Origin: Podarcis cretensis
Taxonomy: Eukaryota
Assembly (NCBI GenBank): GCA_951804945.1
Contig: OX638155.1
Location: forward strand, 29,326,001-29,390,000
DNA length: 64,000 bases
Reading direction: 5' to 3'
Part shown: positions 3,851-50,008 of the stretch, piece after piece
How the letters are laid out: each line of letters starts with the position of its first letter
Position numbering within the stretch: position 1 is the stretch's first letter
The notes under the pieces: generated by a model
Told to the model about the DNA's origin: nothing
The model's database searches: none
Seen by the model: the letters and a program-made list of their open reading frames with translations, nothing else
Made by a program: the position numbers and the translations under genes

Positions 3851-5040
3851 ATTTCTATTTATTCATTCATAAACATAGTTTTATACTGCTATTACATAAA
3901 AAAAATTATCAAAGTGGGTTACAGCCAAAGTACATTAAACCATACAGTAAAAACCATACAAAAAAGAAGGAAATCAGATATCAATTAACCATTGTGGAGA
4001 GATGTTTTCTTTGTTGCCACTTATAAGTAGAATTGTTACTCAGGATTATTACTAATTTTTTTACATACTTTACCAGGATTTTAATCTCTTGGCCTAGTCT
4101 CATCAGAAATGGATAATGCAGAGACTGTACTTGTTTGCAGGTGTAAATCTAGTGAGACATTTTCGCTGTTACTATGGATTCAAGAGCTGCCTTAGTGTCC
4201 ATGCGCACATGAAATTGTCATGCCAAAACAGACCTGCGTCCAAACTGGAGTGTAAATTATGCACTATGTGTGCTGAACAAGAAAGTACGCACACTGTGTT
4301 GTCACAAGGCGTAGGGTGCTGATGAGACCAGCACTAAAGTGCAATGTGCTTTCAGATGGATCCCTTACATCAGTTGGGCGACTGGGATCTAGAAAAAGTG
4401 ATAAAATCACATTAGGAAACAAGTGAACTACATATTGCAATAGGGCTAGGTGAGAGAGAAGGAAGATGGCAAGAGACATCTTGTCTGGAGGACACCATGT
4501 CAGACATAGCACTTGCTCTGCCCTCTGTACTATTGGCTGAGGTGAATGGAATATCACACTTGAAAGCAAAGTATGCAGACCTTTGGTCTGGTACCCAACA
4601 CTTGCAGTGTGTGGATCACTGTGGACAATGCACACTTAGTTATAGGTATGGAAATGCCCTTTGATTAATCACTTCTTGTCAAATGCTTGGCATCTTTCAC
4701 ATGTGCTACTCATCCAACAACTGATCTACAAATGGGTGCCTTGAATAAATTGAGCTAATATTACACAATGGTACTCCAGGTAACACTAATCATATCATCT
4801 TGCATAAACCACAATAACTGATAGTGATGTTCTTAATTCATTCAAAACATTCTAGCGAATTGCTTAAAGTTATTTCAAAGATTGAAGGTTCCATATTGTG
4901 AAACCCGACTGCTCTCTGTAGTGTTCAGTTCTCAGTACAGTGCTGCCTCTTTGCTTCTCTTTTGCTTATCCCCATTGGTGCCTGTAGCAATTAAATGGAT
5001 AATGAGCCGAAGGCCAAACAGATCCTCCAATGTATTTGTA

Positions 5041-20747: not shown

Positions 20748-21485
20748 AATGTGTATATCGCCCTATACCAGTCAGTCTCAGAGCGGCTCACAACACCAAG
20801 TTACAGTATACAAAGCACAAAATGCACAATAAAAACAATCAAAGCACAAAATACATAATAAAATATGAAATAAAAGTAGTTTTGATGTTCCAGCATAACC
20901 TGTGGGGATAACCAGGGGTTGTTGTTGTTGTTGTTGTTGTGGTTGTAAAACTGCTTAATTTGCACAGACAACCATTTCACATGAACAGCCTGCAACACCC
21001 TGCCCCATTAAAAGTTTGCAGAATAATTACCAAAACATAAAATCAGTCAGTGTGTCTGCCCTCCACTGTATGGCAGATGTAACCAGTTGACTGGCACTTC
21101 TGAACGATTCCACTGATAGTTACAGAATGCAGAATTTATGAGAAATGGCCTGAGAGACAGCTGAGAAACTGAGTGTTCAAATCAACTATGTGGATAGTGT
21201 CATTATATAGTTCAGTCATTCCCTGGCACTGGACTCTAATGGCAATAGCTTAAAGATCTGTTTATTACGCACACGGAAACTGCTCTTCAGGGGTTTTTTT
21301 GAGCAGGAACTGAGGAGAACTGAGTTCCCTTACCTTTTTAAAATTAAATAATATTTTTCTGTCTGCGAGGCCTGGAATGGGATATACACCTAATGTCTGA
21401 GCCAAAATTCCATCTATATCTGTAAGCAATAAAACTGTGGTCATTTCTAATCCAGACCATTGTCTGCTTTAGTTTATTAATCATA

Positions 21486-32182: not shown

Positions 32183-32277
32183 ATTGTTTCACCATACCTC
32201 TGAGTTGATCCTAAAGCTAGGGAAGGGCATCAACTCATGCAAGCGGGCTGCATGATGTAGGAACCAGAAACTTAATA

Positions 32278-32503
32278 CAGTGGTACCTCAGGTTACATAC
32301 GCTTCAGGTTACAGACTCCACTAACCCAGAAATAGTGCTTCAGGTTAAGAACTTTGCTTCGGGAAGAGAACAGAAATCATGCTCCGGCGGTGCGGCAGCA
32401 GCAGGAGGCCCCATTAGCTAAAGTGGTGCTTCAGGTTAAGAACAGTTTCAGGTTAAGTACGGACCTCTGGAACGAATTAAGTTCTTAACCTGAGGTACCA
32501 CTG
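32278..32503. mobile_element. Tigger-like MITE
   Basis: TIRs CAGTGGTACCTCAGGTTA / TAACCTGAGGTACCACTG; TA TSD; internal CTTCAGGTTA repeats; sister copy at 41295-41525. Confidence 0.92.
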
Positions 32504-33035
32504 TAGTGATGTTTAAGGAATTTAGTTATTCCAAATCCTGGTATCAACTGGCCTGCACAAGCATTTACACTTGGAACTTCCATGTACTTCCATGCCCACC
32601 CGTGTGGGATGTAACATAAGCAGTCAAGTACAACACTTCCTGTTTGCCCAGAGTGCACATGCAAGGGCGTGTTACTCCACAGCCTTCCTGTCACACCTGG
32701 TCTGGAGCTTCCTCCCTCTGCGTGTGACCAGGTAGGTGGGCGTGACCCTGGGAGACCACATAAAAGGGTCTGGCCATGCAGCCTTCTTCTCTCTTGAGGC
32801 CATGCTCTCCTGATACTGATGTATTTTGCTGTCTGCTGGCTCTCAGCCAACAGAACATGGGCTCATTCCCATATGGGATGAACTCAAACCCTCTACTGTA
32901 ACTCTAAGCTAAAGCCTGCCATCAGGGATCCAACTGTGAACTGAATGTTATACTTTTAAAAGAAGATTGTTCTGTCTTTATTCTTTTTAGGAGGGATAAA
33001 AGGGGACTTACCAGGAACAGAACCCAATCGAGACA

Positions 33036-33287
33036 AAAGAAGAAGAAGAGTTTGGATTTGATATCCCGCTTTATCACTACCCTAAGGAGTCTCAAAGCAG
33101 CTAACATTCTCCTTTCCCTTCCTCCCCCACAACAAACACTCTGTGAGGTGAGTGAGGCTGAGAGACTTCAGAGAAGTGTGACTAGCCCAAGGTCACCCAG
33201 CAGCTGCATGTGGAGGAGCGGAGACGCGAACCCAGTTCACCAGATTACAAGTCCACTGCTCTTAACCACTACACCACACTGGCTCTC
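33036..33287 (-). mobile_element. Squam3-like SINE
   Basis: Same family as 14525-14780. Confidence 0.8.
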
Positions 33288-33328
33288 AGTGTGGATTGCA
33301 AAACCAGATTGGATTGCTTAAGTAAAGA

Positions 33329-33686
33329 GTGGCGCTGTGGGTTAAAGCCTCAGCGCCTAGGACTTGCCGATCGAAAGGTCGGCGGTTCGAATCCCTGCGG
33401 CGGGGTGCGCTCCCACTGCTCGGTCCCAGCGCCTGCCAACCTAGCAGTTCGAAAGCACCTCCGGGTGCAAGTAGATAAATAGGGACCGCTTACCAGCGGG
33501 AAGGTAAACGGCGTTTCCGTGTGCGGCTCTGGCTCACCAGAGCAGCGATGTCACGCTGGCCACGTGACCCGGAAGTGTCTCCGGACAGCGCTGGCCCCTG
33601 GCCTCTTAAGTGAGATGGGCGCACAACCCCAGAGTCTGTCAAGACTGGCCCGTACGGGCAGGGGTACCTTTACCTTTACCTTTACC
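33329..33686 (+). mobile_element. Sauria SINE, young subfamily
   Basis: B-box GGTTCGAATCCC and (ACCTTT)n tail. Confidence 0.95.
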
Positions 33687-34863
33687 AACTAGCTTCCTGC
33701 TATATATTGGGGAATGCACTCTGCTTCTGACTCACAAGTGTGAGTTAGGAAGGATACTATTAAATCAATATATCCACTCCTAGTATCTACAACATTGCCA
33801 CAACCCAGAGCACCACATCTGCTCTGAGGGACTGGGGCTACCTCAGGATGGTTTTAGCAGATGCACAGGCGGAGGAGGGGACAGGTTCCCTTGTGCATGG
33901 ATTCTTGTGCATGGAACAAGTTACTTAGTGGTACATTGGTTACAATCCCTGATCTGTAACCCTTTGACTACTTTGTGGATTGAAACTGAGTGATACCCTG
34001 GATTTCACATTTCTCTTTATGTCATGACACCTTTCTCAAACTTATCAAGATAACACTTGATTACATTTAAAAGGTTCGATTTTACATTCACACTGTGCTT
34101 TCCTGTTGCAATAATACTCAGAGTAGCTCACAATTCAAAAATATGCTATACAAAAACAATGACCGCTCCCCACTTAAAACGGGGGGCGCCCTTTGCGGGG
34201 ACGCGTGCAGCCCTGGATCTGGAGTGGCCCCATCAGCATAGGCTTTGCCTTCCCTCAGGTGGGATACCTGGAGATCCCCGCCTACCCCAGTGAGTTGTCC
34301 AATCCCACCTGGGGGAAGCGTTGCCAGGGAAACCAGGCCAGGTAGGGGGAGGGATTACCTGCCCACACAATAGAGGGTGGATCTTAATTGTTAATCCTCA
34401 CTTGGCTCCAGAGCTTCTCCTGGAAGGACGTTGCTGTACTTCCTTGCTCCAAAAGGTAAGCCTGGGGCCTTTGGCCTCCCCCCCCCCCCCCGCGATTGGG
34501 TTCCAAAGGCTAGGGGGGGGGGGTTTAATGGATTCCAGGATCCCCTTTTAAAAAGGGGATCCTTTTCCCTAGGCGGGCCCTGATGCCCTGGGGTGCTGGG
34601 CGATGGCATGGGGGCCCCTCTGGCTGCCCCCCCATGCCTGCGGGGGCGTGTGGGCCGCGGGGGGGAGGCAACGCCACACGTGGCCCCTTCCCCTTTCCCT
34701 GCTAGGCCTGGCGCCCCTGGGGTGCGGTGGGTGGTGGCGGAGGGGGTCCCCGGCCACCCCCCAGGGCCTTTGTGGCCTCCAGGCGGCCTTTTTTAGGCCG
34801 CAGGGAGGCCTGCCGCGTTTTGGGGGCCTTACTAGGCCTCGGGGGGGCTCCGCCGGCCTAATC

Positions 34864-35765
34864 GGGCCTTGGGCGGCCCCGGAGCCTCCCCTGGGCGGCA
34901 GGGGCCTTCCTGCCGCCCCCGCGATTGCCGGGGGGGCACAGGCCGCGCCGTGTGGCCTCCCCCCGGCTCCAGAGGCCTAGCTAGGCCTCAGAGAGGCCTG
35001 GCTGGGCCTCGGGAGGCTCCGCGGCCTAAGCGGGCCTTGGGCGGCCCCGGAGCCTCCCCTGGGCGGCGGGGGCCTTTCTGCCGCCCTCGCGATTGCCGGG
35101 GGGGCACAGGCCGCGCCGTGTGGCCTCCCCCCGGCTCCAGAGGCCTAGCTAGGCCTCAGAGAGGCCTGGCTGGGCCTCGGGAGGCTCCGCGGCCTAAGCG
35201 GGCCTTGGGCGGCCCCGGAGCCTCCCCTGGGCGGCGGGGGCCTTTCTGCCACCCTCGCGATTGCCGGGGGGGCGCAGGCCGTGCCGTGTGGCCTCCCCCC
35301 GGCTCCAGAGGCCTAGCTAGGCCTCAGAGAGGCCTGGCTGGGCCTCGGGAGGCTCCGCGGCCTAAGCGGGCCTTGGGCGGCCCCGGAGCCTCCCCTGGGC
35401 GGCGGGGGCCTTTCTGCCGCCCTCGCGATTGCCGGGGGGGCGCAGGCCGCGCCGTGTGGCCTCCCCCCGGCTCCAGAGGCCTAGCTAGGCCTCAGAGAGG
35501 CCTGGCTGGGCCTCGGGAGGCTCCGCGGCCTAAGCGGGCCTTGGGCGGCCCCGGAGCCTCCCCTGGGCGGCGGGGGCCTTTCTGCCACCCTCGCGATTGC
35601 CGGGGGGGCGCAGGCCGTGCCGTGTGGCCTCCCCCCGGCTCCAGAGGCCTAGCTAGGCCTCAGAGAGGCCTGGCTGGGCCTCGGGAGGCTCCGAGGCCTA
35701 ATCTGGCCTTGGCTGGCCCCGGAGCCTCCCCTGGGTGGCGGGGGCCTTCCTGTCGCCCCCGCGAT
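34864..35765. repeat. 168-bp GC-rich tandem repeat, ~5.4 copies
   Basis: Units start at 34864, 35032, 35200, 35368, 35536 and 35704; each full unit carries the palindrome GAGGCCTAGCTAGGCCTC. Confidence 0.97.
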
Positions 35766-36484
35766 CCTGCCTCCCCCGGCTGCAGAGGCCGCTGGCAACT
35801 CTGAACCTCCCCTGGGCAGCAGGGGGGATCTCTGCAGCCGGTGGGTATACCCCCCTGAGTCGGCCCCGGGGGACAGTGTGGGCCCCTGCTTGCCCCACCC
35901 CCCCTCAAACTGTGTGGCGGGGGGGTGGAGCCACATCACGGGGCCCTGCCAACCCACTGTAGGACTGGTCTCTGTTGGGGGCGTGCAGGGCCTGCTTGGG
36001 GGTGGCCCCATGTCTGCAGCCATTTCAATGGTGACCGCATGGCGGCAGCCATTGCGCTGGTGGCCACATGGCGGCAGCCATCCTGGATCTGGCCGCATGG
36101 CAGCGGTCATGCCTCGGTGGTCCTCAGGCACACCTATAGCCTCATTAGGTACGTATTGGTTTTACATATCACCACCATGACTTGCCAGCAGGTGCAGTGG
36201 ACAGCAGGCATCGCGCTCATTATCGTCGAGGGGAGACCGCCAATGGACCTCAACTGAAATCTGTGCAGTGATTTTCTAAACTATTGCTTGTTATTTTGCA
36301 GCCTTCAGTAGCGATTCCTGCTGTGACTCAGTTCTTGCCTTATCTCCTCCCCTCCCATTATCTGTACCATTACCTTTATCACTAGTGTGTTTTTGCAAAT
36401 TGATAGCGGGCATTTCCTACCAATCATTGCCCCCCCCTTGTTTTCCGGATTCCCTAGCATACCCCACTCTATCAGCCCCACACC

Positions 36485-37740
36485 ATGCCGCCAAAGCGTC
36501 AGGCTGCTTCTCCTCCCCGCACCAGAAGGGGCACTGTAAGGGGCGCGCCCACCAAGCCTGCCCAGAGACAGGCGACTGGACAGCGGAAGGCGCGTCCAAC
36601 CAGGGAGGAGCAGGCCAAGCCCAGGAAGACCGCGCCCAAGAGGGCAGCGGCACCTAGAGGGTCTTCTGGGTCCATAAGCCCACTAGCCTTGGCAAGCCAC
36701 GCCCGTCTTGAGCGGCGGGATTCGCGCAGAGGGCGCTCTGTGTCACCTCACAGCCGCAGGCGAGGGCGCAGTAGCAGCTCCGCTGACCGCCGTGCTCAGG
36801 AAGCGGGATCACGCTCATCATCCGCATCCACCAGGCGCAGAGGTAGGTCCCCCCGTTCCAGCTCCTCTGACAGGTACAAGAGTGACAAGAGCCCTGAGTC
36901 GCGCAGATCGCGTCATCGCGGGAGGAAGCACCACAAATCCAGGAGGAGGGGCCACAAGTCCAAGAGGGACTCTCCTGGATCATCTAGTACCTCAGGTAGA
37001 TCCAGCTCCACTGATAGTGAACGGGGGGGGGGGGGAGCATCAAAGGCTATTGGGTTACAGGCCCCCACGCCCCAGGGCTGCCGCACTGGGTCTGGCGGTG
37101 CCGCACCGGAGGCACAGGCGTGAACATGGTGCTATCGCGCCATGCGGGGAGGAGGGCACTGACTCCAGAGGTAGAATTAGGAAATCCAACCACAAAAGAA
37201 CCGAGCAGCCCCCAGGCATTCGCCTGCGTGAGAAGTTGCGGGAACGCATCCTTAATGGGGAGTTCGTGGATTTGTTTGATCTGCTATCCCCTGCCGCTTC
37301 GACAGCCCTAAAATCTAAATCCGCCGAGCAGAAGGGGGGGGGGAAAGTGAGTGTTGAGCGTACCTTTCGTAATTGGCTCACTGCATATACCACTTATATG
37401 GGTATTATAGTCACTAGTTACCCTGACAGGGGTTGGCACCTGACCAACTACCTACTCATCATCCTAAAGGCTGAAGCCATGTCTGGGGGGGGAGGCGGCA
37501 CTCGCCTATGACCAGGCATTCAGGGAGCGGGCGGCAGAGGACGACACAGTTAGATGGGATATCAAAGATGATGACGTGTGGTCTGAGTTGGTTTCCCCGT
37601 TCTTCAAGAAAGGGCCCAACAATGTGAAACAGTCCAAATATCAATCCAAGGCCCCCTAGAGATCTTGCTGGGAGATCTTGCGAGCGCTGTAGTGGATCTC
37701 ACCCACCATCAAATGTATTTGGGGGAAGAAGCTTTTTCGA
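36485..37740 (+). pseudogene. DIRS/Ngaro ORF1 (gag-like), frameshifted at G-runs
   Basis: Arg/Ser-rich N-terminus, then RILNGEFVDLFDLL...FRNWLTAYTTY...ALAYDQAFRERAA...WD motifs typical of DIRS ORF1. Confidence 0.8.
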
Positions 37741-37849
37741 GGCTCCCGTGGATCAGGCACAGGCACATCTCATGACAAAAGAGAGGCCGGAGCCTCTACA
37801 GGCTCCTCTGGCGCTCAGCAAAGCAAAAACAATGCCCGCAAATAGTGTT

Positions 37850-39066
37850 CTCCTTTCCCTAGCCCCCTCACCCATATCTCTATCAGCAATGCTGCTTTTG
37901 TTACACCAGTACCCTAATAAAGAGGCAGCACATTGAGGAGGGCTTTAAGGAAGGCTTCCGCATCCCAGTGGTAGGCACCCCCTCATGCACCAATCCCCCC
38001 AACCAAAAGTCTGTCCGAGATATGCCACACATTGCCGAGAAGAAGATTACCAAAGAACGCTTGCTGGGGCGAGTGGCAGGTCCCTTCACAGAACCTCCAT
38101 TTCCAAACTTCATAGTGTCTCCACTAGGTATTGTACCTAAGAAGGCCCCAGGCGAGTTTCGATTAATACATAACCTTTCTTACCCAAGGGGTGGGTCAGT
38201 AAATGATGCCATTCCTCAAGAACAAGGCTCAGTCAAAAATGCATCTCTTGATCAGGCAATCAGGCTGGTTAGGGAGTGTGGCCCGGGCGCGCTCATGGCA
38301 AAATGTGACATCGAATCAGCCTTCCGTCTGTTACCAGTCCACCCCGGGGACTTCTGGTTGCATTTGTGGTATGGGCCATGAAACGCAGGTCAGGGTCCCA
38401 CCGCATTTCCCATTACGTCCAGCCAGCGGGCTCAGACGCGTGCGCTAGGGCGCTGGCATGCTTCATTCAGCTGGCAGCTGAATTGGGCATCCCATTGGCA
38501 GCGGACAAGACCGAAGGTCCAACCACTGTCATCTCATATCTGGGTATTGAACTGGATTCTGTGAGCCAAACCTCTCACCTGCCCCTGGCCAATCTTGCCT
38601 GCTGCCTAAGGAACAGCTACAGGTGCACTCTGACGCCTCTGGTCGCTTTGGCTTCGGCACTTACTTCAGGGGTCACTGGTGCGCGCAGCCTTGGCCGACA
38701 TCTTGGCATGAGGAGGGCATTACATGTGACTTAACTTTCCTTGAGTTTTCCCAATCCCGTGTTTGGGGGCACCTCCTCAAGGACACCAGGGTGTGCTTCT
38801 GGCCGGACAACCAGGCGGTGGTAAGAATCATTGCGAAGCAATCCGCAAAATCCAATAGGGTAATTCGCGCGCTCCGTCTCTTCGTGCTGGAATGTCTGAA
38901 AGGTAACATTTCCTTTTCTGCACGGTTCATCCCGGGCCTCAATAACGACATTGCAGATGCCCTGTCTCGCTTTCAGGTGGAGCGCTTTCGCGACCTAGCA
39001 CCCGAGGCCGATCAACTCCCAGAAGCCTTTCCGGAGGACCTCTGGGAAATTGGACGGGAGAAGTGA
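37850..39066 (+). pseudogene. DIRS-type reverse transcriptase and RNase H, with internal deletions
   Basis: SPLGIVPKKAPGEFRLIHNLSYP; MAKCDIESAFRLLPVHP; KTEGPTTVISYLGIELDS; RNase H SDASG, DNQAVV, NDIADALSR; LPxG and YxDD regions missing. Confidence 0.92.
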
Positions 39067-39971
39067 CAGCAGGAGTTCTGGGCGCCCTTGCACCATCAAC
39101 GCTGCGGTCCTACACCAGAGCATGGTCCCAATTCGAGGGGTTCAGAGATAAGTTTAGCTTACGTCGCAGGCGTACAGCTAAGGAGTCTGATGTTCTAAAA
39201 TATTTGGTTCACCTAAAGCGTAGGGGCATGGCCCTTAAAACCATCAGCCTGCACAAGGCCGCTATCTCCTACTTAAGCAACTGTTTTGGCTCCCAGACCC
39301 CTGTAACACTTTCCACGTAAGGAAGCTTATTGCAGGGTGGCGTCACTCCCACCTGCCCATTCCAGATAAGAGGAGGCCAGTAACCATAGAGATCCTCCGG
39401 CTGATCTGGGATGCGCTCCCCAGTATTTGCTGGTCCAACTATGAGGTCAGGCTCTTCAGGGCAGCCTTCTCCCTATCCTTCTTTGGTGCGCTCCGTATCG
39501 GGGAGTGCATAGGGGGCACATTGTCACCTCATCGCAGGGGCTTGTCTGTGGCTGATATCAACCTTGACAGGCGCATGATACAAGTCAAAATCCAAGCCTC
39601 CAAAAACCGATCAACTAGGTAGGGGTTCCACGCTAAGTCTAGCCTCCTCCCCACACACTGGACCATGCCCTGTCGCGGACACACGCAAATTCCTGAAGGT
39701 ACATCCTCCGGGGCCAGCCCCCCTCCTCATTCATGCATCAGGCCGCCCCATGACCCGTTGCCAATTTGTCTCAATATTGCGTAAGGCCATCCATGCTTGT
39801 GGAGGCGACCCGGCACAATTTTCCGGGCATTCCTTTCATATTGGTGCAGCAACCTCGGCAGCTGCGAGCGGCCTCCCGGCGGAACACATAAAAACAATGG
39901 GGCGGTGGCGTTCAGCTGCCTTCAAAGGCTATATTCGAAACAACCAGCAGACACTGACAGATACCATATAA
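39045..39971 (+). pseudogene. Tyrosine recombinase (phage-integrase family)
   Basis: LAPSTLRSYTRAW; FFGALRIGE (catalytic R); SK/TDQ; GHSFHIGAAT (HxxR with R>H); GRWRSAAFKGYIR (W, Y); two frameshifts. Confidence 0.92.
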
Positions 39972-40113
39972 TCCTTTCTTTCAGGCTCAACCCCCAAACA
40001 TGTGTGGATCTTTGGCCACAGCATAGTGCATTCGGTGGCCATCCATGCCACTACTGGTCCAGGCGGAGAACATCTTGGTCTGCAGCCAAAGATCTCCATT
40101 TCCTGGTTCGGCC

Positions 40114-40561
40114 AACGTGGAATGCGATGGGATGCCCTGCTCCCTTGGTTGCGTCACGAACTTGCGTTCCGCCATCCGCCAAACGCGGTTGTGCTCCACC
40201 TTGGCGAAAATGACTTGGTCGTGCAAACGTGGAATGCGATGGGATGCCCTGCTCCCTTGGTTGCGTCACGAACTTGCGTTCCGCCATCCGCCAAACGGGG
40301 TTGTGCTCCACCTTGGCGAAAATGACTTGGTCGTGCAAACGTGGAATGCGATGGGATGCCCTGCTCCCTTGGTTGCGTCACGAACTTGCGTTCCGCCATC
40401 CGCCAAACGCGGTTGTGCTCCACCTTGGCGAAAATGACGTGGTCGTGCAAACGTGGAATGCGATGGGATGCCCTGCTCCCTTGGTTGCGTCACAAACTTG
40501 CGTTCCGCCATCCGCCAAACGCGGTTGTGCTCCACCTTGGCGAAAATGACTTGGTCGCACA
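40114..40561. repeat. 112-bp tandem repeat x4
   Basis: AACGTGGAATGCG at 40114, 40226, 40338 and 40450. Confidence 0.97.
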
Positions 40562-40608
40562 AAAAAGCATAATTCTGATCAAAACAGCGATCGCGGACCT
40601 GGAAAGCG

Positions 40609-40700
40609 TACATGCCGCTCACCCCAACATCATGATTTTCTGGTCTGAAGGAGCTACATGCCGCTCACCCCAACATCATGATTTTCTGGTCTGAAGGAGC
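40609..40700. repeat. 46-bp tandem duplication
   Basis: TACATGCCGCTCACCCC...GAAGGAGC at 40609 and 40655. Confidence 0.95.
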
Positions 40701-40793
40701 TATGGTGGGCACCTATCAGACCGTGGTAACGAGCGTTGGCTGAGCGACATCAGGCATGGCCTGATTGACTGGTTGGAGGATGGCAAAGGGGAT

Positions 40794-41151
40794 TTTCAGA
40801 TGTAGGTAGTCTTGGCGGCGAGACCGCAATCTTTGCGGTATCAGGCCTTGGGCGGAATCCTTTAGTCCATCTTCCTCTTTGCGGCGGCGATACCAGGGTT
40901 CCCCGTTAAAGGGGTTTTTGAAGGGAGGCTTTGGCCGTACGCCGAAAGGTCGTCATTGCTCTCCCCTGCGGCGGCGTAACGGGGGCGGCTATCTCTGCTT
41001 GAACATATGTTCTCCAGAGCCGGCCCATCCCCCACACACACACTGGATAACCCTGATGCTCCCTAGGTCCCCGGCTGGGGACTAGGGAGGGAGAACGCCC
41101 AATGCCTGAGCCAAGGTCTACCCACATTTGAAATTTAATAAAGTTGTGGCC
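40794..41151 (+). ncRNA. Putative structured cis-RNA in the 3' region of the Ngaro element
   Basis: Nested helices 40794-40816/41110-41133, 40841-40854/41096-41109, 40894-40900/41049-41055 and 40901-40908/40977-40984, plus four hairpins, followed by AATAAA. Confidence 0.65.
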
Positions 41152-41294
41152 AATTTAATCCCATAGCACGTTGTCTAGAGTCGTTATTCCACATGACGGG
41201 GGGGACCACTCGGGATCTGGGGACTCCGCCTGTCCACGCAATATAAAATACAGAACACAATATAAAAGATGAACTACAAGATACTAAAATTATA

Positions 41295-41525
41295 TAGTGG
41301 TACCTCGGGTTACAGACGCTTCAGGTTACAGACGCTTCAGGTTACAGGTTCCGCTAACCCAGAAATAGTACCTTGGGTTAAGAACTTTGCTTCAGGATGA
41401 GAACAGAAATCGCGTGGCAGTAGTGGGAGGCCCCATTAGCTAAAGTGGTACCTCAGGTTAAGAACAATTTCAGATTAAGAACAGACCTCCAGAACAAATT
41501 AAGTTCTTAACCCAAGGTGCCACTG
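41295..41525. mobile_element. Tigger-like MITE
   Basis: Sister of 32278-32503; TA flanks. Confidence 0.9.
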
Positions 41526-42906
41526 TATATTAAATACAATCATATCATTAACAATTATATACCAGTTGTTGTTTCTTTTCCTATCCTCAGTGGGGTAGAG
41601 GCTCCAGAATTCTGACCCAGATACCCCAACACCATCCCAAAATGCTACCCCTACCCAGTATCCACCTAAGAGCAGCCATCCAAGGAACTAGCCTTGCACA
41701 TCTCTTGTCTCCCTTGGACAGTTTCAGACATTATTTGGCCATCATTCTGTGTCCCCGCTATCCCACTCTTCAACTGTTCACCCTTGGCTGAGAGCTGCAG
41801 AATGGGAGCCCTCTTCCTCTCACCAGTTAACTCATGCCCTTGCTAGGCACAACCCTTAAATAAAATACCTGAGGAGGTAGGAATTATCCCTCCCTGGTGA
41901 GATGTGTCTTGTTCCCTATTACCATCTGAAAATGTTCCTGTTCACTCAGGTGTTTAGTACCTGAAGGCAGGGTATGTACAGTCATCAGCTTGGAAATCAA
42001 TGTATATATTAGGGGATTGCATAGTCCCCAAGGTTCGCCTTATATCTGTGCATTTAAAAAAATTCTAATCTGTTTCTGAATCACTTTGTGCTCTCACCAC
42101 TTCAATCTCTGCTCCAGGTTCAGAACTGCTTTGTATGCAATATTCCCCATTCACTCTAATGAGGAAGCAAAAAGATGGCTATAACTTTTGGCCAAAGTGG
42201 TTGAACTTTACAGGCAGGGGAGTCCCTCCAAGGTAGATTGAACCTGCCAAATCATAGGCAGATTAATCCCGGAAGGGGGGGGGGGTTCTGCAAGAAATGG
42301 ATGCAATTTGTAAGCATGGTCACCCCATCTTAGGGTATGAAGCCCACCAATTTTCAGAATGATAGCTCATGTGGTCCTGCCATAATGGTAGACTTTATCA
42401 CTTTGGAGTGGGTACAACAGGGTAATTGGTGGTGGTGGAAATGCAGCAACCCCACCCCAGTGGATTTTGGGGAAACAGTGGAGATGCCTCCATTGACTTA
42501 TAAAGGGGATAGAGATGGAGGTGGTGGAGAAAAGATGATAATATAATGGGATCTTAGTTTACCCTTCAGAGAGCTGCAATTTTCAGCACCCTTAGCAAAC
42601 TGCAGTAACCAGGATTCTGTGTGTGCGCGCGCGCACGCGCTTTCAATATATGGTGTGTATGCAGCCTGAATCTCACACAGCATTACTGCTTCTGTTCTCT
42701 TCTGTGAAAAGTGTTGCAACTTGTTAGTCTTCTCTTCACTGAAGGGGGAGCCGTGATCTTGTGCGAGTTCGCAACGCCCGTGTTGCACAGCTACTATGGG
42801 CAGATATCTCATGTGAGCAATATTTTAAGCACAGGCACTTACCGTCTCTGTTGCCATGTGTTGCCGTGTGTCTACAACAGCACTGCTGTGTGTGTGTGTA
42901 GGAATA

Positions 42907-43152
42907 AAGGTAAAGGTAAAGGGACCCCTGACCATTAGGTCCAGTCGTGACCGACTCTGGGGTTGCGGCGCTCATCTTGCTTTATTGGCTGGGGGAGCTG
43001 CTGTACAGCTTCCGGGTCAAGTGGCCAGCATGACTAAGCCGCTTCTGGAGAACCAGAGCAGCACACAGAAACACCATTTACCTTCCCGACAGAGCAGTAC
43101 CTATTTATCTACTTGCACTTTGACGTGCTTTCGAACTGCTAGGTTGGCAGGA
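42907..43152 (-). mobile_element. Sauria SINE, 5'-truncated
   Basis: TSD GTGTGTAGGAATA (42894-42906, 43160-43172). Confidence 0.9.
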
Positions 43153-43349
43153 ATTCCTAGTGTGTAGGAATACTGATGCTAAAAAGCAGTATGGTCTATG
43201 TTGGGTACATCTGTCGATGCATTTACATCTGCAAGGGCAAGGTTGTGTTCATTCTAAAATAAAACACAATAAAATAAAACCTTGTACTTCAAACTTTACT
43301 TAACCAATTTCAGCAAAAGCTGCAAACCGGGTTGGCGGGGGGGAGGGCA

Positions 43350-43740
43350 TTGGGAAAGTCTTCAAGGCGGATGTCATTGGGGATTTTTTGTGCCCTTCAT
43401 TTTCATTCGCTCTAGATGCCTGCCCGATTGGTTTAACTGTGAGCAGCATATTACCAAGGACCTCTTGCATACAGTATATTAGCAGAATATTGATATAGCT
43501 GAAATGCTGTTGTGGGATTCATCACTGGGTAAATCCTCTGCTGTCTGCAGTTTTACAGAGCCGTTTAATTAGCAGTTTTATACCACCCTCCTATTCCTCT
43601 CATTAAATTAATTAATAATTAAGTTCGAATATAGGCATCTTTAATGTCACAATTATATTTCAGTTTTATGGTCACCAGAGTTTTAACTCATTAGCCTGGG
43701 CGCTCATAAACCATAGCTCTGCAGAAAAGCTGGCTGAGGC
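43350..43740. promoter_or_regulatory. Putative CNE
   Basis: Dense TAAT/TTAATTA/TTTTAT homeodomain words in unique sequence. Confidence 0.35.
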
Positions 43741-44883
43741 TGTGTCATACAGGTATGCTGCCTTTAGGTGGGTGGCATTTAAATGTTGCTCTCAGTATGG
43801 CTGACTTCTCAACTCTAAGAAACTGTTTTCTGGGGCCCTGGCAGTTATGGCCAAACAAACAGGCCAACAAGGGTGCAAGGCTCAGGATCAAACCATGGGT
43901 GGCAATTCAGGGTGTGCTCTCAATGCAGCACTTATTCCATTTGTCTGTTTAAGGCAGGAATGGGGACATCACTGGATATTGTTGGACTCTAATTCCAATC
44001 AGCCCCAGCCAACATGGCCGAAGGGATTATGGGAGTTGTAGTTCAATGACCTCTGGAGGACAACAGGTTCCTCTTCCCCAGTTTAATGGTTTCCTGTCAG
44101 ATTGTAGTAACGTTTAAATTCTTATTTACTTACAAAGGTATTTATTGCTTGTCTTTCTATCAAAGACCCTCAAGGCAGCTTATGATTAAAACATGAACCA
44201 TATGAAACAACCCAAGAGAAAAATGTGAAGTAGACAAAATAAAATTTACAGGAGATAAAATTTAGCCAGAGACCATTTAAATTTAAATGTACACATACCT
44301 GGAGAAATTAATATATGCTGGTGTGAAGGTGATGGAAGAGAAACATAATTCCTGTATCACCAGGTATCTTTCTCAGGTACAGTTGCCACTCAATGACACC
44401 GGGGGGGGGTGGGTTGGGTATTTTTTGAGGTCAGGTGGTAAAGCTATCTGGGTCAAACAACAAAGATTTAGAGGAAAACAAACAAAAAAAAGTTTTGTTA
44501 AGATTTATGGAAATTCCCTGAGGGCTGGGAAAAGCCCAACTATTACCTCATACGCATTGGAAAAATAGCTGAATTTTCCCATTTTTTCTTAACTTTCAGG
44601 GAATTTCCTTAGATTCCCTTTGTTTCAACAGCAAGGATGCCCTCAAATGTATTGCCTCATTGTCAGTACTGAAGTGAGATTTGACTGCTAGTCAATCAAC
44701 TTATCTATATGGGATTGGGTGGGAACGCCATTTCCACCATCACCCTGGGCAGCAAAATTGGACTGGTTCTGTCCAGCAGATTGCTGCTAGAAATCTGAAA
44801 GATAAAGGCAGAGGGACAGAATTCACATAATGAAAGTCTGTAGCATTTTCATGGGAGGAGCCTATGTTGCTTCTGTTCTAGAG

Positions 44884-45262
44884 TAGGGTTACCAGACGTC
44901 CCTGGTTCCCGGGGACAGTCCCCAGATTTGCAAATCTGTCCCTGGGAAACATGGCAGCGGCAGCCTCAGCAGCCTGGAGCCAGCCTGGTAGCACAGTTGG
45001 CTCTAGCTGGCTTCAGGAGCCGCTCGCTGCCATGGGGCCCGCCATTTTTCCTCGCCGGAAGTCCCCATATGATGTGTCTTGTGCACAACACATCATGTGA
45101 GGACTTCTGGTGAGGAAAAATGGCAGGCACCACGGCAGCGAGCAGCGAGCAGCTCCTGAAGCCAGCCAGAGCCAATTGCTCTACCAGGCTGGCTCCGGGC
45201 TGCTGACTGCCGCTGCCACTGCTGAAGGGGAACTGTGGATGTCCGGCGGTACAGATCTCCTG
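44884..45262. mobile_element. hAT-like MITE remnant with a long internal palindrome
   Basis: TAGGGTTACCAGACGTCCC terminus; 44951-45076 is an inverted repeat of 45087-45220. Confidence 0.7.
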
Positions 45263-47513
45263 CCCCCTTCCCCTTTGTTTATATATATATATATATACAT
45301 AGCCAAGATCTTACAATAAAGTCTATTCACAAGTAAACGACATGAAACAAAGGCCTTCCCACTGCTAATCAAAAGCTTCCTGTTTGTAGTTTAACCCATT
45401 TTGTTGCTCTTCTGGTCAGCTTGAATCACAAATTAATGCTCCTTTAAATCTTAGTCAACATGCAAAATTCAGTTGCTTTATGAGCATTCTCCAAGTCCTC
45501 TTGGGGATTATGTATATTGCCCAAGAAATGTGCACAATTCATGAAATGACTCTGTCTGCATTCTCCATGAGGCCTGATGAATGTGCACAATGGTCGGTTG
45601 TTATGAACATTAACTGCTCTACTTGCATTCCCTCTCTCTCTCACACATATATATGATGGCTATCTCAGCAACAGCATTTAATACTTTACAATATGTTGCT
45701 CATCGTTTTTATATGTAGTGTATTTTTCATCCATTATCCCTGATTAAACCAGCTTTGTTGAAAAGGCAAAACCAAACATGGCTTTGAAATTGTTCTTATT
45801 TAATTTTACTAGCCTTCATGTAACCCAGGATAACACTAATTATCTCTTTAGTGTGGCTCGTATTTCTAATGTAATTCATATGTAAATTGTAATTTAATTC
45901 ATATGGGCATGTTTGCATTCTTTGCGTATGCTCCGCTAAGAGCACAAATGCTGAATTAGAACTGTTTGGAAATCAAAACGGGATGTTGCCTTTCTTTTCT
46001 GAATTGTCTTTGATTTGTTTTGGCTTGCTGTTTGTGTAGCAACGGCATGTCTCATTCGTTCTGATTTGAAAGAAGTGACTGGCATTCCTAAGCTGTGGAA
46101 CACCTACAATGGGATTTCCTGCTGTGTGTTTTCGAAGCCCAATTCCCATTTTATATTCCACATGACAACGAGCTTGTGAAGACATGAATTAGGTGTCTTC
46201 AAGCTTGCAACTAGTTGTGGCCTTTTTTCATGGGATCCACTAGCAAACACCATAAGTCTGGGGTAGTCAAAATGGTGCCCTCCAGATTTTGTTGGACTAC
46301 AATGCCCATCATTCCTAGCCAGCATGGTCAATGGACAGGAATGATGGGAGTTGTAGTCTCATCACATCTGGAGGGCACCCCATGGGCTACTCCTGTCTTA
46401 AATGATCTTTGAGTTCTGCACCCAGTTCTAGGCCTTGTTCTGATTCATGCTCAGAGTGTTTCTAATTCACATCACCGTCATGTTGTGGATGGACCCAGCA
46501 TCTCCTCATGACCTCCAATGGTCATGCACCAGGGCAGAAGGTTCTGTCTAGATGAATCTTCACAAATGTGGGAGACAGGCCAAGGCATCTAACTAAAGGT
46601 ATCTGCAAAACTCAGTAAGACCCAGCCTGGGGGAAGATCTTCCACTGTCATTAGCCAGCCCTCTTATCTTCTATAGCATCATTTTAATTTTGGTTTGTTT
46701 CTTTAGCTTTAACTGGCATAGTGCAAAAGCCACACTACCAGATGTCCAAGTACCTAGGCATGCATCTGGAATTATTAAATGTTTCCGCAGTCATTTTCTT
46801 TATTCATATGTTCCTTTATGTTTCTAATTCCCTGCGTTAAAATATTTTTTGTGGGCAAGGACTAGGAGATCTCAATAAAATTGATATTGATGTTTGCTCT
46901 CCAGTGGCCATCTGGGCGCACATGCATGAGTTCTAATACAGTTGCCCATAACCACAGGAATCAATACACAGAAGTATATGCAACTGTCCATTAATGTTGC
47001 AGCTATGGAGAGACATATTGACCCCACTAATTCTTAAAATCTAGACATGTGGATATCAGAGATGCATACGGATTTGAATGCATTTCTCTATGAGCTCCAA
47101 CTTTAGTTTAATTAAGAAGAAGGGCTAGTGTGGTGTAATAGTTAAAACACAAAACTTGAGAGGGTGGGGTTCAAATCTCTTTGCAGCTGTAAAACTCAAT
47201 GGGTGACCTTAGGGCCATTACAAGCTTAGTTGGCAGGTCCCTTCCTGCTGACTGAATTTTAAAAAATCCTAAAGCATTTCTGAGCAGAACAATTCTGAAT
47301 GTGTTTACTCAGAAGTAATCTCCAGTGTGTTTAGGAATGTACTCAACAAAACCATTCAGAACTGAGACGTTGGCCACTTTGCCAAATCCAGCCAAACTAG
47401 ATGCAGCAAACTCCTTTTCCCTTTTGCTGTAGACATTTCTTCTGACATGATGGGGATCTATTTGTAGAATCCATGTGTTCTAATGACTCTCTTCCTATAA
47501 ATCCTCTTGAAAT

Positions 47514-47551
<38 letters not shown>

Positions 47552-47600
47552 TTGAAAGAGGAAGAGAAGGGGGAAGAAGAAGACGACCAGCCAGTTATAT

Positions 47601-47650
47601 GTTGTTGTTGTTGTTGTTTAGTTGTGTCCGACTCTTCGTGACCCCATGGA
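47601..47650 (-). mobile_element. 50-bp BovB 3' tail insertion
   Basis: Reverse complement CCATGGGGTCACGAAGAGTCGGACACAACTAAAC(AAC)n; 10-bp TSD CCAGTTATAT. Confidence 0.88.
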
Positions 47651-47743
47651 CCAGTTATATACCCCATTGGTCATACTGCATGGAGGCATTCAAATTTGGG
47701 GCTACATAGCTTGCGACTCATCAAACTGAGTGCAGATTATGTA

Positions 47744-47945
47744 CGGTGGTGTAGTGGTTAGACTGTTGGACCTGGGAACTCAGGGTTCAAATCCCTCCCC
47801 CCAGCAATGAAGCTCACTGGGTGAGCTTGAGCCAGTCACTGCCTCTCAGCCTAACCTAACTTGCAGCGTTGTTGTCAGAATTAAATGAGGAGGGAAAGAA
47901 CTTTTAGATCCTTGGAGAAAAAGGTGGAATATAAATAAATAAAAC
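47744..47945 (+). mobile_element. MIR/Squam3-like SINE (older)
   Basis: GGTGTAGTGGTTAGA A-box, GGGTTCAAATCCC B-box, CORE-like body and ATAA tail. Confidence 0.7.
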
Positions 47946-48141
47946 CAGGGACCAGTGTTTTATTATAAGATGGTAGAGAAGCCCCACTCTCCTAATTTCC
48001 TGCTACAGTCCTCTTAGCCACTGTTTGGAGAAGATGATGAGGCTGATATTGGGGTGAGTCAGAGAGTGGTGAGAGTTGTGAATTCTCCTAAGGGCACCCC
48101 TTTCCCTTCCATAAATCAAGCTCTGCAAAAAAAACATGGCA

Positions 48142-48927
48142 GTTGCGTGTGTAGGTCCCCAGGCCACCCCTCAAATAATTTCACACATAACACGTAATTT
48201 TAGTTTTGGTTTTTGGGCACTATTTTGGCCACAACTTTATTAAAATACAAAATCAGTGAGTGGTTGTTTAGACATTGGTTATGACTATCTGTCCCCCCGC
48301 CTGGGACAGAACTGACATACCGAGGTCCGATCGGAAGCCAGTAGAAGGGAAAGTCAAAATTGGAGATCATTTGAGCTAAGCGTCGGACCCACACCGCTCA
48401 CCCCAGCAGCTCCCCAAGGCTTGCCGGCCCTGGTCCCATGACAGGGATTGGACGAAATCGTGGCAAGCCCCAGGATTCCTTTAACAGAATTCCCTTTAGC
48501 GCAATAGGAGGGGCAGGCACAGCCTATCCTGACCCCTCCACCACCAGCATTTTATAACCAGTGCCTAACAGCAACCTTACAAGTTGTGACAAATTGCTAA
48601 GTAGTAGGCAAAAACCAAATGGCACAGCCAATCAGCCAAATGGCAAAATTCCTACTAGGCCCCTGCATCAAGGCAGGCGACCCCATGACAGGCAAAGCAA
48701 GGTCAACCGGAAAAGAGGGCGGGCGGGCGGATGATCCAATGCACTCTGCAAAAGAGAAAGAGAAACAGTGCCCCAATATTTAAAGACTATGGTCCCACCC
48801 ACCCAACTTGCAACATACAATTTGCCCCAGCAACCCGGTTATCCAATCAAAGTACCAGGCAACAACCATTAACCTGCCTGGCAACAATAGGGCTGGCCCG
48901 GCAGCCCACACCGCAACACACGCTCTC
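48142..48927 (-). mobile_element. Non-coding Ngaro-related element (non-autonomous copy or solo repeat)
   Basis: In reverse complement it begins AAT|GA and ends CTGGGGAC...CACGCAA like 34161-41242; it shares AATAAAGTTGTGGCCAA and CCAATGYCTRA. Confidence 0.7.
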
Positions 48928-49236
48928 ATTTAATTGGAGAATGTGCTTTATCAAGCAGGCCACAGCACAGGTGGTGTGGCGGCCCACAAGTTGCATAGGT
49001 CTGCTTTCAGTGATCATTTGAAATAATCAGAAGTATTTTAAGCTTTGGTTTTATGTGTGGCTTTCCTTGTTATATGCAGACATTAAAAGGAACTGGCAGG
49101 CTCAAGAGATGGGAGATGCATTGGCTCCTTCTGACACGTCGGGGATGAATCCAGTCGTATAAAATAATAGGCAGACCTACACACTGTCAAACACATCATG
49201 ACAACATAAGAACTGTCCAAAACTATTTTCAATAAT

Positions 49237-49384
49237 NNNNNNNNNNNNNNNNNNNNNNNNNNNNNNNNNNNNNNNNNNNNNNNNNNNNNNNNNNNNNNNN
49301 NNNNNNNNNNNNNNNNNNNNNNNNNNNNNNNNNNNNNNNNNNNNNNNNNNNNNNNNNNNNNNNNNNNNNNNNNNNNNNNNNNNN
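49237..49384. other. N block (148 nt)
   Basis: Run of N. Confidence 0.99.
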
Positions 49385-49643
49385 TTTAAGGGCAGATTGG
49401 CTACCTGAATGTCCCAGGACCTTGCAGATGAAGGAAAAGGGTAGACGTACCATAAATCTAGATTATAGGCAAAGGAGATGAGTAGAAAAGTAAATGTGTG
49501 CCAAGCTACTGCCAAACATACCATGTGAACTCAGGCATGGGGAGGGGAGGAGAGAGGGAGTGTTCTTATTTCATGAATGCTCTTGAATGGCTGAACCACT
49601 CTTGATCTGTTCTTGAATGGAGGAAGCACTCTTGTTTAATTAA

Positions 49644-50008
49644 AGGTAAAGGTAAAGGTACCCCTGCCCGTACGGGCCAGTCTTGACAGACTCTGGGGTT
49701 GTGCGCCCATCTCACTTAAGAGGCCAGGGGCCAGCGCTGTCCGGAGACACTTCCGGGTCACGTGGCCAGCGTGACATCGCTGCTCTGGCGAGCCAGAGCC
49801 GCACACGGAAACGCCGTTTACCTTCCCGCTGGTAAGCGGTCCCTATTTATCTACTTGCACCTGGAGGTGCTTTCGAACTGCTAGGTTGGCAGGCGTTGGG
49901 ACCGAGCAGCGGGAGTGCACCCCGCCGCAGGGATTCGAACCGCCGACCTTTCGATCGGCAAGTCCTAGGCGCTGAGGCTTTAACCCACAGCGCCACCTGC
50001 GTCCCGTC
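49644..50008 (-). mobile_element. Sauria SINE, young subfamily, full length
   Basis: 13-bp TSD CTTGTTTAATTAA (49631-49643, 50009-50021). Confidence 0.95.

What the first reader, a model, noticed from the sequence alone, without database searches (positions are those of the whole stretch)
40794..41151. Large multi-branched fold at the 3' end of a tyrosine-recombinase retrotransposon
Seen: nearly all ~340 nt between the hydrolase ORF and the polyA signal can be paired into one nested fold. Closing stems are TTTCAGATGTAGGTAG-TCTTGGC (40794-40816) with 41110-41133 (two G-U, one mismatch) and TCAGGCCTTGGGCG with CGCCCAATGCCTGA. Inner stems are CAGGGTT/AACCCTG and CCCCGTTA/TAACGGGG. Hairpins are ACCGCA-ATCTT-TGCGGT, CTTTGGC-CGTAC-GCCGAAAG, GAACATATGTTC and CTCCCTAGGTCCCC-GGCT-GGGGACTAGGGAG. 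Known: DIRS/Ngaro elements have no tRNA PBS and their priming is poorly understood. Inference: this is a cis-acting RT-recruitment, priming or packaging RNA, functionally analogous to hepadnaviral epsilon or a retron ncRNA.
Basis: partly seen in the sequence, partly recalled or inferred. Interest (0 to 1): 0.85.

Follow-up and report, generated by a model that had tools for sequence, protein, structure and literature searches.

The report
Structured terminal repeat of Ngaro retrotransposon
The unusually stable fold is real, but most of it lies in the element's 3' terminal repeat, which also occurs in the genome in vastly more copies than the coding part; two of its helices recur in a distant relative, so it is probably a replication signal, though no function has been shown.

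Summary
The fold exists. Window 40794-41133 folds at -159.9 kcal/mol, z -6.07 against dinucleotide shuffles, while coding windows of the same element give z -1.2 to +2.2.

The excess stability comes from a few helices:
- a 23-bp outer stem, 40794-40816 with 41110-41133;
- a 14-bp mid stem, 40841-54 with 41096-41109;
- three hairpins.

The interior alone is unremarkable (z -1.39).

New context: 40835-41242 is a sharply bounded repeat with about 100-300 times the summed read depth of the hydrolase region. A public contig joins its end to 34161, the element's 5' start. I read it as the 'B' split direct repeat of a degraded Ngaro-type element, also present as short solo or non-autonomous units, as SIRE is for VIPER.

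A diverged relative in the window (48147-48610, minus strand) keeps the mid stem with four two-sided changes, and keeps the terminal hairpin. That supports a conserved structure. It does not show RT priming.

Both strands fold about equally well. Rfam has no match.

First-stage notes on other pieces of this genome mention structured DIRS/Ngaro solo repeats.

Verdict: a plausible cis-acting replication domain, function unproven, moderate interest.

The parts
34161..41242 (+). Degraded Ngaro-type tyrosine-recombinase retrotransposon copy: gag-like ORF, RT-like and RNase H-like pieces, YR, SGNH-like hydrolase. CAAT stands at both junctions (34157-34160 and 41239-41242).
   Evidence: ORFs. YR N-terminal SAM-like domain from Pfam. 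Hydrolase homologues. The 3' end is set by the depth drop and divergent flanks at 41241/2. The 5' end is set by a contig that joins 41242 to the letters of 34161-34187.
40002..40805 (+). Remnant of the SGNH-type hydrolase ORF. It is broken by five 112-nt tandem units, a 46-nt duplication and a frame change. Stop codon at 40803-40805.
40794..40816 (+). 5' arm of the outer closing stem. It overlaps the hydrolase stop codon and lies in the low-copy internal part of the element, outside the repeat module.
   Evidence: Pair probability 0.98-1.0. Duplex -31.2 kcal/mol against -16.9 +/- 2.4 for shuffled arms, 0 of 1000. Depth profile.
40823..40839 (+). Hairpin ACCGCAA-TCT-TTGCGGT. The boundary of the high-copy module (40835) falls inside it.
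   Evidence: (probability 0.92)
40835..41242 (+). High-copy repeat module, read as the 'B' split direct repeat. Depth steps are sharp at both ends. Most other copies carry a further ~39 nt near 40875.
   Evidence: Summed depth is about 5e4-2e5 (X6) and 2e4-9e4 (X11), against 5e2-1e3 and about 1e2 for 40700-40819, and about 15 in the flank. 1762 and 1402 contigs were laid.
40841..40854 (+). 5' arm of the conserved mid stem.
41001..41012 (+). Palindromic hairpin GAACATATGTTC.
   Evidence: probability 1.0
41059..41089 (+). Terminal 13-bp hairpin. The family shows pair 41064:41084 as U-A, U-G (the majority) and C-G.
41096..41109 (+). 3' arm of the conserved mid stem.
   Evidence: its best partner in the upstream 336 nt is 40840-40855; 2 of 1000 shuffles do as well.
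41110..41133 (+). 3' arm of the outer closing stem, inside the repeat module.
41134..41153 (+). Conserved block holding AATAAA (41137-41142). It is identical over 20 nt in locus 2 and recognisable in locus 3. It is a presumed poly(A) signal about 100 nt before the element's end.
   Evidence: No RNA ends were seen there (table 6).
34161..34187 (+). Start of the element ('A' repeat). These letters follow position 41242 in a contig of run X1, giving a B-to-A junction.
48147..48610 (-). Locus 2, a diverged solo-type relative of the module. It has the same poly(A) block, the CACGCAA end motif, the mid stem 48568-48554 with 48282-48268, and the terminal hairpin within about 48310-48288.
   Evidence: nhmmer E 5.5e-6
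21367..21464 (+). Locus 3, an old fragment of a related 3' end. Only the poly(A) block and the CTAATGTCTGAGCCAA segment are kept. No mid stem was found.

Best explanation
Identity. The fold is the 3' terminal repeat (the 'B' split direct repeat, 40835-41242) of a degraded Ngaro-type retrotransposon, together with the last ~40 nt of the element's internal region.

Anatomy. On the sense strand it forms a closed domain that ends 3 nt before a conserved AAUAAA block. Three things hold it together:
- a conserved 14-15 bp long-range stem;
- a conserved terminal hairpin;
- in the copy that follows the hydrolase gene, an extra 23-bp stem whose 5' arm lies outside the repeat.

Function (inferred). I think it is a cis-acting replication signal of the element's genomic RNA. 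It would mark the 3' end of the template for the element's own RT or Gag, for template recognition or packaging, and perhaps as the place where minus-strand synthesis starts. Short A-B units that carry the same module are either solo remnants or passengers copied in trans, as SIRE is to VIPER.

Shown: the fold, the repeat boundaries, the B-to-A junction, and structural conservation in one relative.
Inferred: that RNA is the active strand, and any role in replication.
For: - Stability: z -6.07 against -1.2 to +2.2 in coding windows. The same fold is kept in the 543-nt context 40700-41242, z -3.49.
- The outer and mid stems are far beyond shuffled arms, 0 of 1000 and 2 of 1000.
- In locus 2 the arm homologous by nhmmer (E 5.5e-6) finds its best partner at the homologous upstream place, 14 of 15 pairs, 3 of 1000 shuffles. 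Four pairs changed on both sides and one changed to G-U.
- RNAalifold picks this stem as the closing helix, covariation term -11.75.
- The terminal hairpin is kept in locus 2, with three two-sided changes by my own alignment.
- In the family, 41084 is G in 93-98% of depth and 41064 is C in 9-25%. So U-A, U-G and C-G all occur, and U-G pairs only on the sense strand.
- The module has sharp boundaries and very high copy number.
- The B-to-A junction contig fits the split-direct-repeat layout.
- AATAAA lies about 100 nt inside the element's end, as the less-than-full-length-RNA models need.
- The primer of DIRS elements is unknown, and a 3' hairpin was proposed for DIRS-1 (PMC7192593).
Against: - The minus strand folds nearly as well, as RNA (z -5.17) and as DNA (z -4.95 against -5.32).
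- The interior is no better than shuffles.
- The two majority differences of the family (40918 C, 40934 A) break interior MFE pairs of this copy. Listed variants are not depleted in paired positions.
- The strongest stem has one arm outside the repeat and is absent from locus 2. It cannot form in the second B copy or in solo units.
- Comparative evidence rests on one diverged relative, 52% identical overall, and on summed variant tables without linkage.
- RNA reads cover the module on both strands, run into the flanks, and show no ends at the presumed poly(A) site.
- This window copy has no A2-B2 after B.
Confidence: 0.4

Rival explanations
1. DNA-level signal. The inverted segments act in DNA or in the single-stranded cDNA. 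They could be paired binding sites for the tyrosine recombinase or accessory proteins. Or they could be a fold-back in the linear single-stranded cDNA that helps second-strand priming or circle formation.
For: - Both strands fold about equally well, also with DNA parameters.
- Inverted repeats recognised by one protein also co-vary, which would explain without RNA.
- DIRS-1 amplifies through linear single-stranded cDNA (PMC7192593).
- The module is a terminal repeat next to the recombination junction.
Against: - The arms are 240-265 nt apart, unlike known recombinase core sites.
- G-U pairs in conserved helices favour the sense strand: locus 2 position 5, 41064:41084 in the family majority, and two in the outer stem.
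- The mismatches sit at different positions in the two loci.
Confidence: 0.22
2. No function. The complementarity is a historical accident in the family's founder, such as an inverted duplication from template switching. It was then copied passively, and the module is abundant only because solo repeats pile up.
For: - The interior is unremarkable.
- Family variants are not depleted in stems.
- The outer stem is not kept in locus 2, and nothing is kept in locus 3.
- Solo A-B units can arise by recombination between repeats.
Against: - The mid stem and hairpin survive, with two-sided changes, in a relative that is otherwise only ~52% identical. Neutral decay would not give that.
Confidence: 0.2
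3. Poly(A)-site control. The outer stem forms only where B follows the internal region (B1) and not where B follows A (B2). The two identical AAUAAA copies in one transcript would then sit in different structures. That would let transcription read through B1, as the split-direct-repeat model needs, and end in B2.
For: - The 5' arm of the outer stem lies outside the repeat.
- The stem ends 3 nt before AAUAAA.
- Without that arm, 41119-41130 can pair locally with 41139-41150 (consensus helix).
- The conserved end of A (..GTCACAACTTTG) is complementary to TAAAGTTGTGGC (by eye; 7 of 300 shuffles for the X6 form).
- A contig carries the B-to-A junction.
Against: - No RNA 3' ends were seen.
- It is unknown whether X1 is RNA.
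- The alternative pairings would hide, not expose, the B2 signal.
- The pairing of the A end is not significant for the X23 form, 102 of 300.
Confidence: 0.1

Closest known systems
Split direct repeats (A1 ... B1-A2-B2) of Ngaro, PAT and VIPER elements, e.g. DIRS-53_XT of Xenopus with A 236 bp and B 152 bp (PMC9210276; Goodwin and Poulter 2004 as cited there)
   Same: A terminal non-coding repeat follows YR and the SGNH hydrolase ORF. A B-to-A junction is seen in a public contig. The gene order is gag, RT/RH, YR, hydrolase.
   Different: The B module here is longer (~408 nt). The window copy ends after a single B, with no A2-B2. No conserved secondary structure has been described for these repeats in the papers I could read.
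SIRE, the short interspersed element of Trypanosoma cruzi, which equals the A2+B2 repeats of VIPER (PMC6681497)
   Same: A short unit made of the terminal repeats of a YR retrotransposon is far more abundant than the coding element. There is the same open question of solo remnant against trans-mobilised passenger.
   Different: The host is a vertebrate and the superfamily is Ngaro-type. The A part of the short units was seen only as 30-nt loose ends. Copy numbers here are only depth ratios.
DIRS-1 3' hairpin (positions 4792-4805), proposed as a self-primer, and the internal complementary region (PMC7192593)
   Same: A structure near the 3' end of the RNA of a YR retrotransposon whose primer is unknown. 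The RNA is shorter than the element.
   Different: The DIRS-1 hairpin is a small local stem at the very 3' end. Here the structure is a ~270-340 nt domain closed by long-range stems upstream of the poly(A) signal. There are no inverted terminal repeats or ICR here.
3' UTR stem-loops of stringent-type LINEs, shared with their partner SINEs (established knowledge, not tested here)
   Same: A structured 3' end is shared between a low-copy autonomous element and a high-copy short element.
   Different: LINEs use target-primed reverse transcription with an endonuclease. The structures there are short single stem-loops. No trans-mobilisation is shown here.
Hepadnaviral epsilon and retron msr/msd RNA
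   Same: Structured RNA linked to a reverse transcriptase.
   Different: Epsilon is a ~60-nt bulged stem-loop that templates protein priming by a terminal-protein domain. Retron RNA primes from a branching G flanked by short inverted repeats. Neither anatomy nor a matching protein domain is present, and Rfam gives no match.

Membership tests
Ngaro-type YR retrotransposon | Encodes a tyrosine recombinase | tested here: met
   ORF 39063-39320 matches Phage_int_SAM_1, E 1.9e-5, 25.3 bits, above the curated cut-off of 22.3. The catalytic part is fragmented and was not matched by Pfam.
Ngaro-type YR retrotransposon | Encodes RT and RNase H upstream of YR, with no methyltransferase domain | tested here: inconclusive
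   The ORF pieces 37968-39066 have no Pfam or PDB sequence match. The Atlas nearest clusters are unnamed eukaryotic ones; the nearest named is RVT_1 at 0.88, a lead only. I recognise the PKK..FRLIHNLS..VND motif as DIRS-type RT from memory.
Ngaro-type YR retrotransposon | SGNH hydrolase ORF after YR (amphibian-type Ngaro) | tested here: met
   The 73-aa N-terminal piece has 453 relatives at E<=1e-3, best 53% identity. The C-terminal piece aligns with the end of P0008, E 2e-8. GHS and GENDL motifs are present.
Ngaro-type YR retrotransposon | Split direct repeats A1 ... B1-A2-B2 | tested here: inconclusive
   No A2 or B2 follows B in the window, and there is no 5'/3' repeat above the shuffle level. 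But a contig in run X1 joins 41242 to the letters of 34161-34187. Most copies of B are preceded by a different conserved sequence.
Any Rfam family (including HBV epsilon and retron RNAs, if curated) | Covariance-model match | tested here: not met
   cmscan of 33000-43000 at E<=1 gave no match in 40794-41242.
tRNA-derived SINE | tRNA-like head with a Pol III promoter | tested here: not met
   ARAGORN finds no tRNA-like gene in 33000-50000. The A/B-box resemblance of the upstream loose end is by eye only.

The most novel reading that the evidence does not exclude
The B repeat carries the first defined cis-replication element of tyrosine-recombinase retrotransposons. It would be a conserved long-range-closed RNA domain recognised by the element's RT or Gag. 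That would explain why thousands of short A-B units carrying it spread in trans. An additional context-specific outer stem would tell the upstream B copy from the downstream one, so that transcription reads through the first poly(A) signal.
Probability: 0.15. Interest if true: 0.75.

Novelty: new variant of a known kind. Interest (0 to 1): 0.45.

Why it matters
How DIRS, Ngaro, PAT and VIPER elements choose their template and prime reverse transcription is unknown (PMC7192593). A bounded module of ~270-340 nt with two conserved helices, shared by a coding element and a very abundant short repeat, gives a concrete object to test. It can be probed, mutated in natural copies, and searched for cDNA start sites.

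It also offers a vertebrate parallel to the VIPER/SIRE pair. If it proves to be only a decaying inverted repeat, then the finding is an ordinary terminal repeat of a dead transposon.

Tried and rejected
The 3' flanks of the 150 hydrolase relatives could therefore not be fetched, and the planned cross-family covariation test was not possible.
- Pattern scans of metagenome, genome and viral collections found nothing related. The two metagenome hits (L001, L002) are bacterial chance matches.
- The search for related loci with the RT piece in viral contigs found nothing.
- Paper text search for four motifs found nothing.
- Rfam gave no match. There is no tRNA-like head. The bacterial promoter/terminator scan is irrelevant and empty.
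- No significant 5'/3' terminal direct or inverted repeat exists in this copy. Local scores of 19-23 compare with a shuffle mean of 19.6 and maximum of 33. I dropped the idea of DIRS-type ITRs.
- The A-region alignment with locus 2 is unconvincing.
- The three-locus consensus fold is uninformative, -23 kcal/mol with covariation -1.3.
- Pairing of the conserved A end with the poly(A) block is attractive by eye but only weakly supported.
- The search of earlier findings by sequence was blank, which means nothing.
Variants were judged one by one instead.

Full report
**What is there**

The window holds a degraded tyrosine-recombinase retroelement on the + strand.
- ORF pieces run in this order: a basic gag-like ORF (36485-), RT-like and RNase H-like pieces (37968-39066), a recombinase (39063-39971) and an SGNH-type hydrolase (40002-40805).
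- The recombinase N-terminal domain passes Pfam's cut-off (Phage_int_SAM_1).
- The hydrolase N-terminal piece has 453 relatives at E<=1e-3. Its last 34 residues align with the C-terminus of homologue P0008. This fixes the stop codon at 40803-40805.
- The RT pieces are not recognised by Pfam or by PDB sequences. The Atlas gives only a lead.
- The copy is dead. The hydrolase carries five 112-nt tandem units and a 46-nt duplication. A 168-nt GC-rich tandem array sits in the 5' part.

**Check of the fold**

| Stretch | Strand, model | Energy (kcal/mol) | z |
|---|---|---|---|
| 40794-41133 | +, RNA | -159.9 (shuffles -126.5 +/- 5.5) | -6.07 |
| 40794-41133 | -, RNA | -155.0 | -5.17 |
| 40794-41133 | +, DNA | -77.0 | -5.32 |
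| 40794-41133 | -, DNA | -74.4 | -4.95 |
| 40700-41242 (same fold kept) | +, RNA | -224.7 | -3.49 |
| 40841-41109 | +, RNA | -122.4 | -3.55 |
| 40835-41241 (module, no outer 5' arm) | +, RNA | -158.6 | -1.86 |
| 40855-41095 (interior) | +, RNA | -97.6 | -1.39 |

- 340-nt windows stepped through the coding part give z between -1.2 and +2.2 on the + strand. The 3' end therefore stands out within its own element.
- The excess is carried by the closing helices.
- In the ensemble these have pair probabilities 0.88-1.0: the outer stem, the mid stem, hairpin 40823-39, the GAAC/GTTC hairpin and hairpin 41059-89.
Forcing the two inner stems gives -142.6 kcal/mol.
- Against shuffled arms, the outer duplex (-31.2 against -16.9 +/- 2.4) is beaten 0 times in 1000. 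The mid duplex is beaten 2 times in 1000.
- Folding energy does not name the strand or the molecule.
- Rfam has nothing here.

**The region is mostly a high-copy terminal repeat**

I laid contigs of three runs from three organisms, plus raw RNA reads, on 40700-41285.
- Summed depth jumps about 100-300 fold at 40835 and falls back at 41241/2.
  - X6: about 5e2-1e3 before the step, 5e4-2e5 inside, 17 in the flank.
  - X11: about 1e2 before, 2e4-9e4 inside, 15 in the flank.
- 1762 and 1402 distinct contigs were laid. The tool warns that summed depth is not copy number, so I use only the order of magnitude.
- Beyond 41241/2 the contigs run into unrelated sequences (agreement 0.39-0.40). That marks the end of an insertion.
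- One contig of run X1 continues with 27 letters identical to window 34161-34187. This fixes the element's 5' start and shows a 3'-end-to-5'-start junction.
- Before 40835 most copies carry a different, conserved sequence ending in GTCACAACTTTG (agreement 0.69-0.95).
- A contig of organism F bridges the hydrolase end into the module, with a 13-nt insertion. So the junction belongs to the coding family and is not an accident of this locus.
- CAAT stands at both junctions of the window copy (34157-60 and 41239-42) and there is no target duplication. This fits recombinase integration through a short shared core; that reading is inference.
- My reading: 40835-41242 is the B repeat of a split-direct-repeat element (A1 ... 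B1-A2-B2; PMC9210276, PMC6681497).
  - The X1 junction is B1-A2.
  - The abundant units are A-B, the counterpart of T. cruzi SIRE, which equals A2+B2 of VIPER (PMC6681497).
  - The window copy itself ends after one B and shows no significant 5'/3' repeat. It is either a B1xB2 deletion product or a simpler form.
- First-stage notes on other pieces of this genome mention solo DIRS/Ngaro repeats and a structured ~550-nt unit. I could not see their sequences and used them as leads only.

**Comparative evidence**

The window itself holds two diverged relatives of the module:
- locus 2, 48147-48610 on the minus strand, E 5.5e-6;
- locus 3, an old fragment at 21367-21464, E 0.0017.

Locus 2 is only 52% identical to our copy overall. 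It shares a 20-nt block around AATAAA, the CACGCAA end motif and the CACAACTT motif upstream.

Mid stem in locus 2:
- Its segment homologous to our mid-stem 3' arm finds its best partner in the upstream 360 nt exactly at the homologous place. 14 of 15 positions pair, and 3 of 1000 shuffles do as well.
- Four pairs are changed on both sides, one is changed to G-U, and the single mismatch sits at a different position.
- RNAalifold on the pair picks this stem as the closing helix, covariation term -11.75.

Other helices:
- The terminal hairpin is also kept in locus 2 (8 bp). By my own alignment it has three two-sided changes.
- The outer stem is not kept in locus 2. Locus 3 keeps no stem.

Within the high-copy family:
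- Pair 41064:41084 occurs as U-A (this copy), U-G (the majority, G at 93-98%) and C-G (9-25%).
- The two majority differences 40918 C and 40934 A break interior MFE pairs of this copy.
- The listed variants are not depleted in paired positions. That is expected for dead copies and is not evidence either way.
- G-U pairs in conserved helices outnumber A.C about 4 to 2. This is a weak hint for the sense strand.

**RNA evidence**

Raw RNA reads of organism F cover the module on both strands at low depth (65 reads). They include A-end-to-B junctions and run into the flanks. No pile-up of ends appears at the presumed poly(A) site, and there are no reads on the hydrolase end. This looks like passive transcription of scattered short units. 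Nothing is learned about the coding element's own RNA.

**Interpretation**

Shown:
- an exceptional closed fold;
- its coincidence with a bounded terminal repeat;
- structural conservation of two helices in one distant relative.

Inferred: function.
- I favour a cis-acting replication signal in the genomic RNA, for template recognition or packaging and possibly as the initiation site. Confidence 0.4.
- Three things point that way:
  - the structure is conserved while the sequence is not;
  - it ends 3 nt before a conserved AAUAAA block that lies ~100 nt inside the element's end;
  - the same module is shared by coding and short units.
- A DNA or cDNA-level role (0.22), no function (0.2) and poly(A)-site control by the context-specific outer stem (0.1) remain open.
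- The analogies to epsilon and retron RNA are not supported by any feature tested.

**Limits**

- There is only one usable relative.
- The variant tables carry no linkage between sites.
- The kind of run X1 is unknown.
- There is no access to other copies of this genome.
- I built no consensus of the repeat family or of the element.

Noticed in passing
window 34686-35825: About seven units (six listed register copies) of a 168-nt tandem repeat, 72-78% G+C, sit between the element's 5' start and the gag-like ORF. Each unit gives a weak, sub-threshold mir-879 match in Rfam, probably from a GC-rich hairpin.
   Followed up: no
window 40104-40700: Five 112-nt tandem units and a perfect 46-nt duplication lie inside the hydrolase ORF. 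The middle of the hydrolase seems to be missing between IMIFWSE and GGHLS.
   Followed up: partly
window 34157-34160 and 41239-41242: CAAT stands at both element/flank junctions, with no target-site duplication. The implied empty site reads ..ACAAAAACAAT|ATAAAATAC.., a possible recombinase crossover core.
   Followed up: partly
window 41286-41400, also 32268-32364: A SINE-like repeat (GGTACCTCGGGTTACAGACGCTTCAGG...) lies about 45 nt downstream of the element. A second copy, 88-90% identical, lies 9 kb upstream.
   Followed up: no
window 48730-48790, minus strand: Upstream of locus 2 there is a polypyrimidine tract followed by CAG, like a 3' splice site. The solo-type unit may have been exonised as a terminal exon that uses the repeat's AATAAA.
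   Followed up: no
window 40875-40880 (table 5c): Most copies of the high-copy family carry about 39 extra letters here, G-run ... CGTGAAGCGGTGACCCA ... C-run, themselves hairpin-like. This copy lacks them.
   Followed up: no
window 40812-40822, 40879-40892, 40966-40976: The motif GCGGCGGCG or GGCGGCG occurs three times within the fold. The family shows a GCG insertion polymorphism at 40967.
   Followed up: no
window 33624-33684 and 42905-42965: A 61-nt inverted pair, 87% complementary, lies 9.2 kb apart and brackets the element. These are probably two copies of another interspersed repeat.
   Followed up: no
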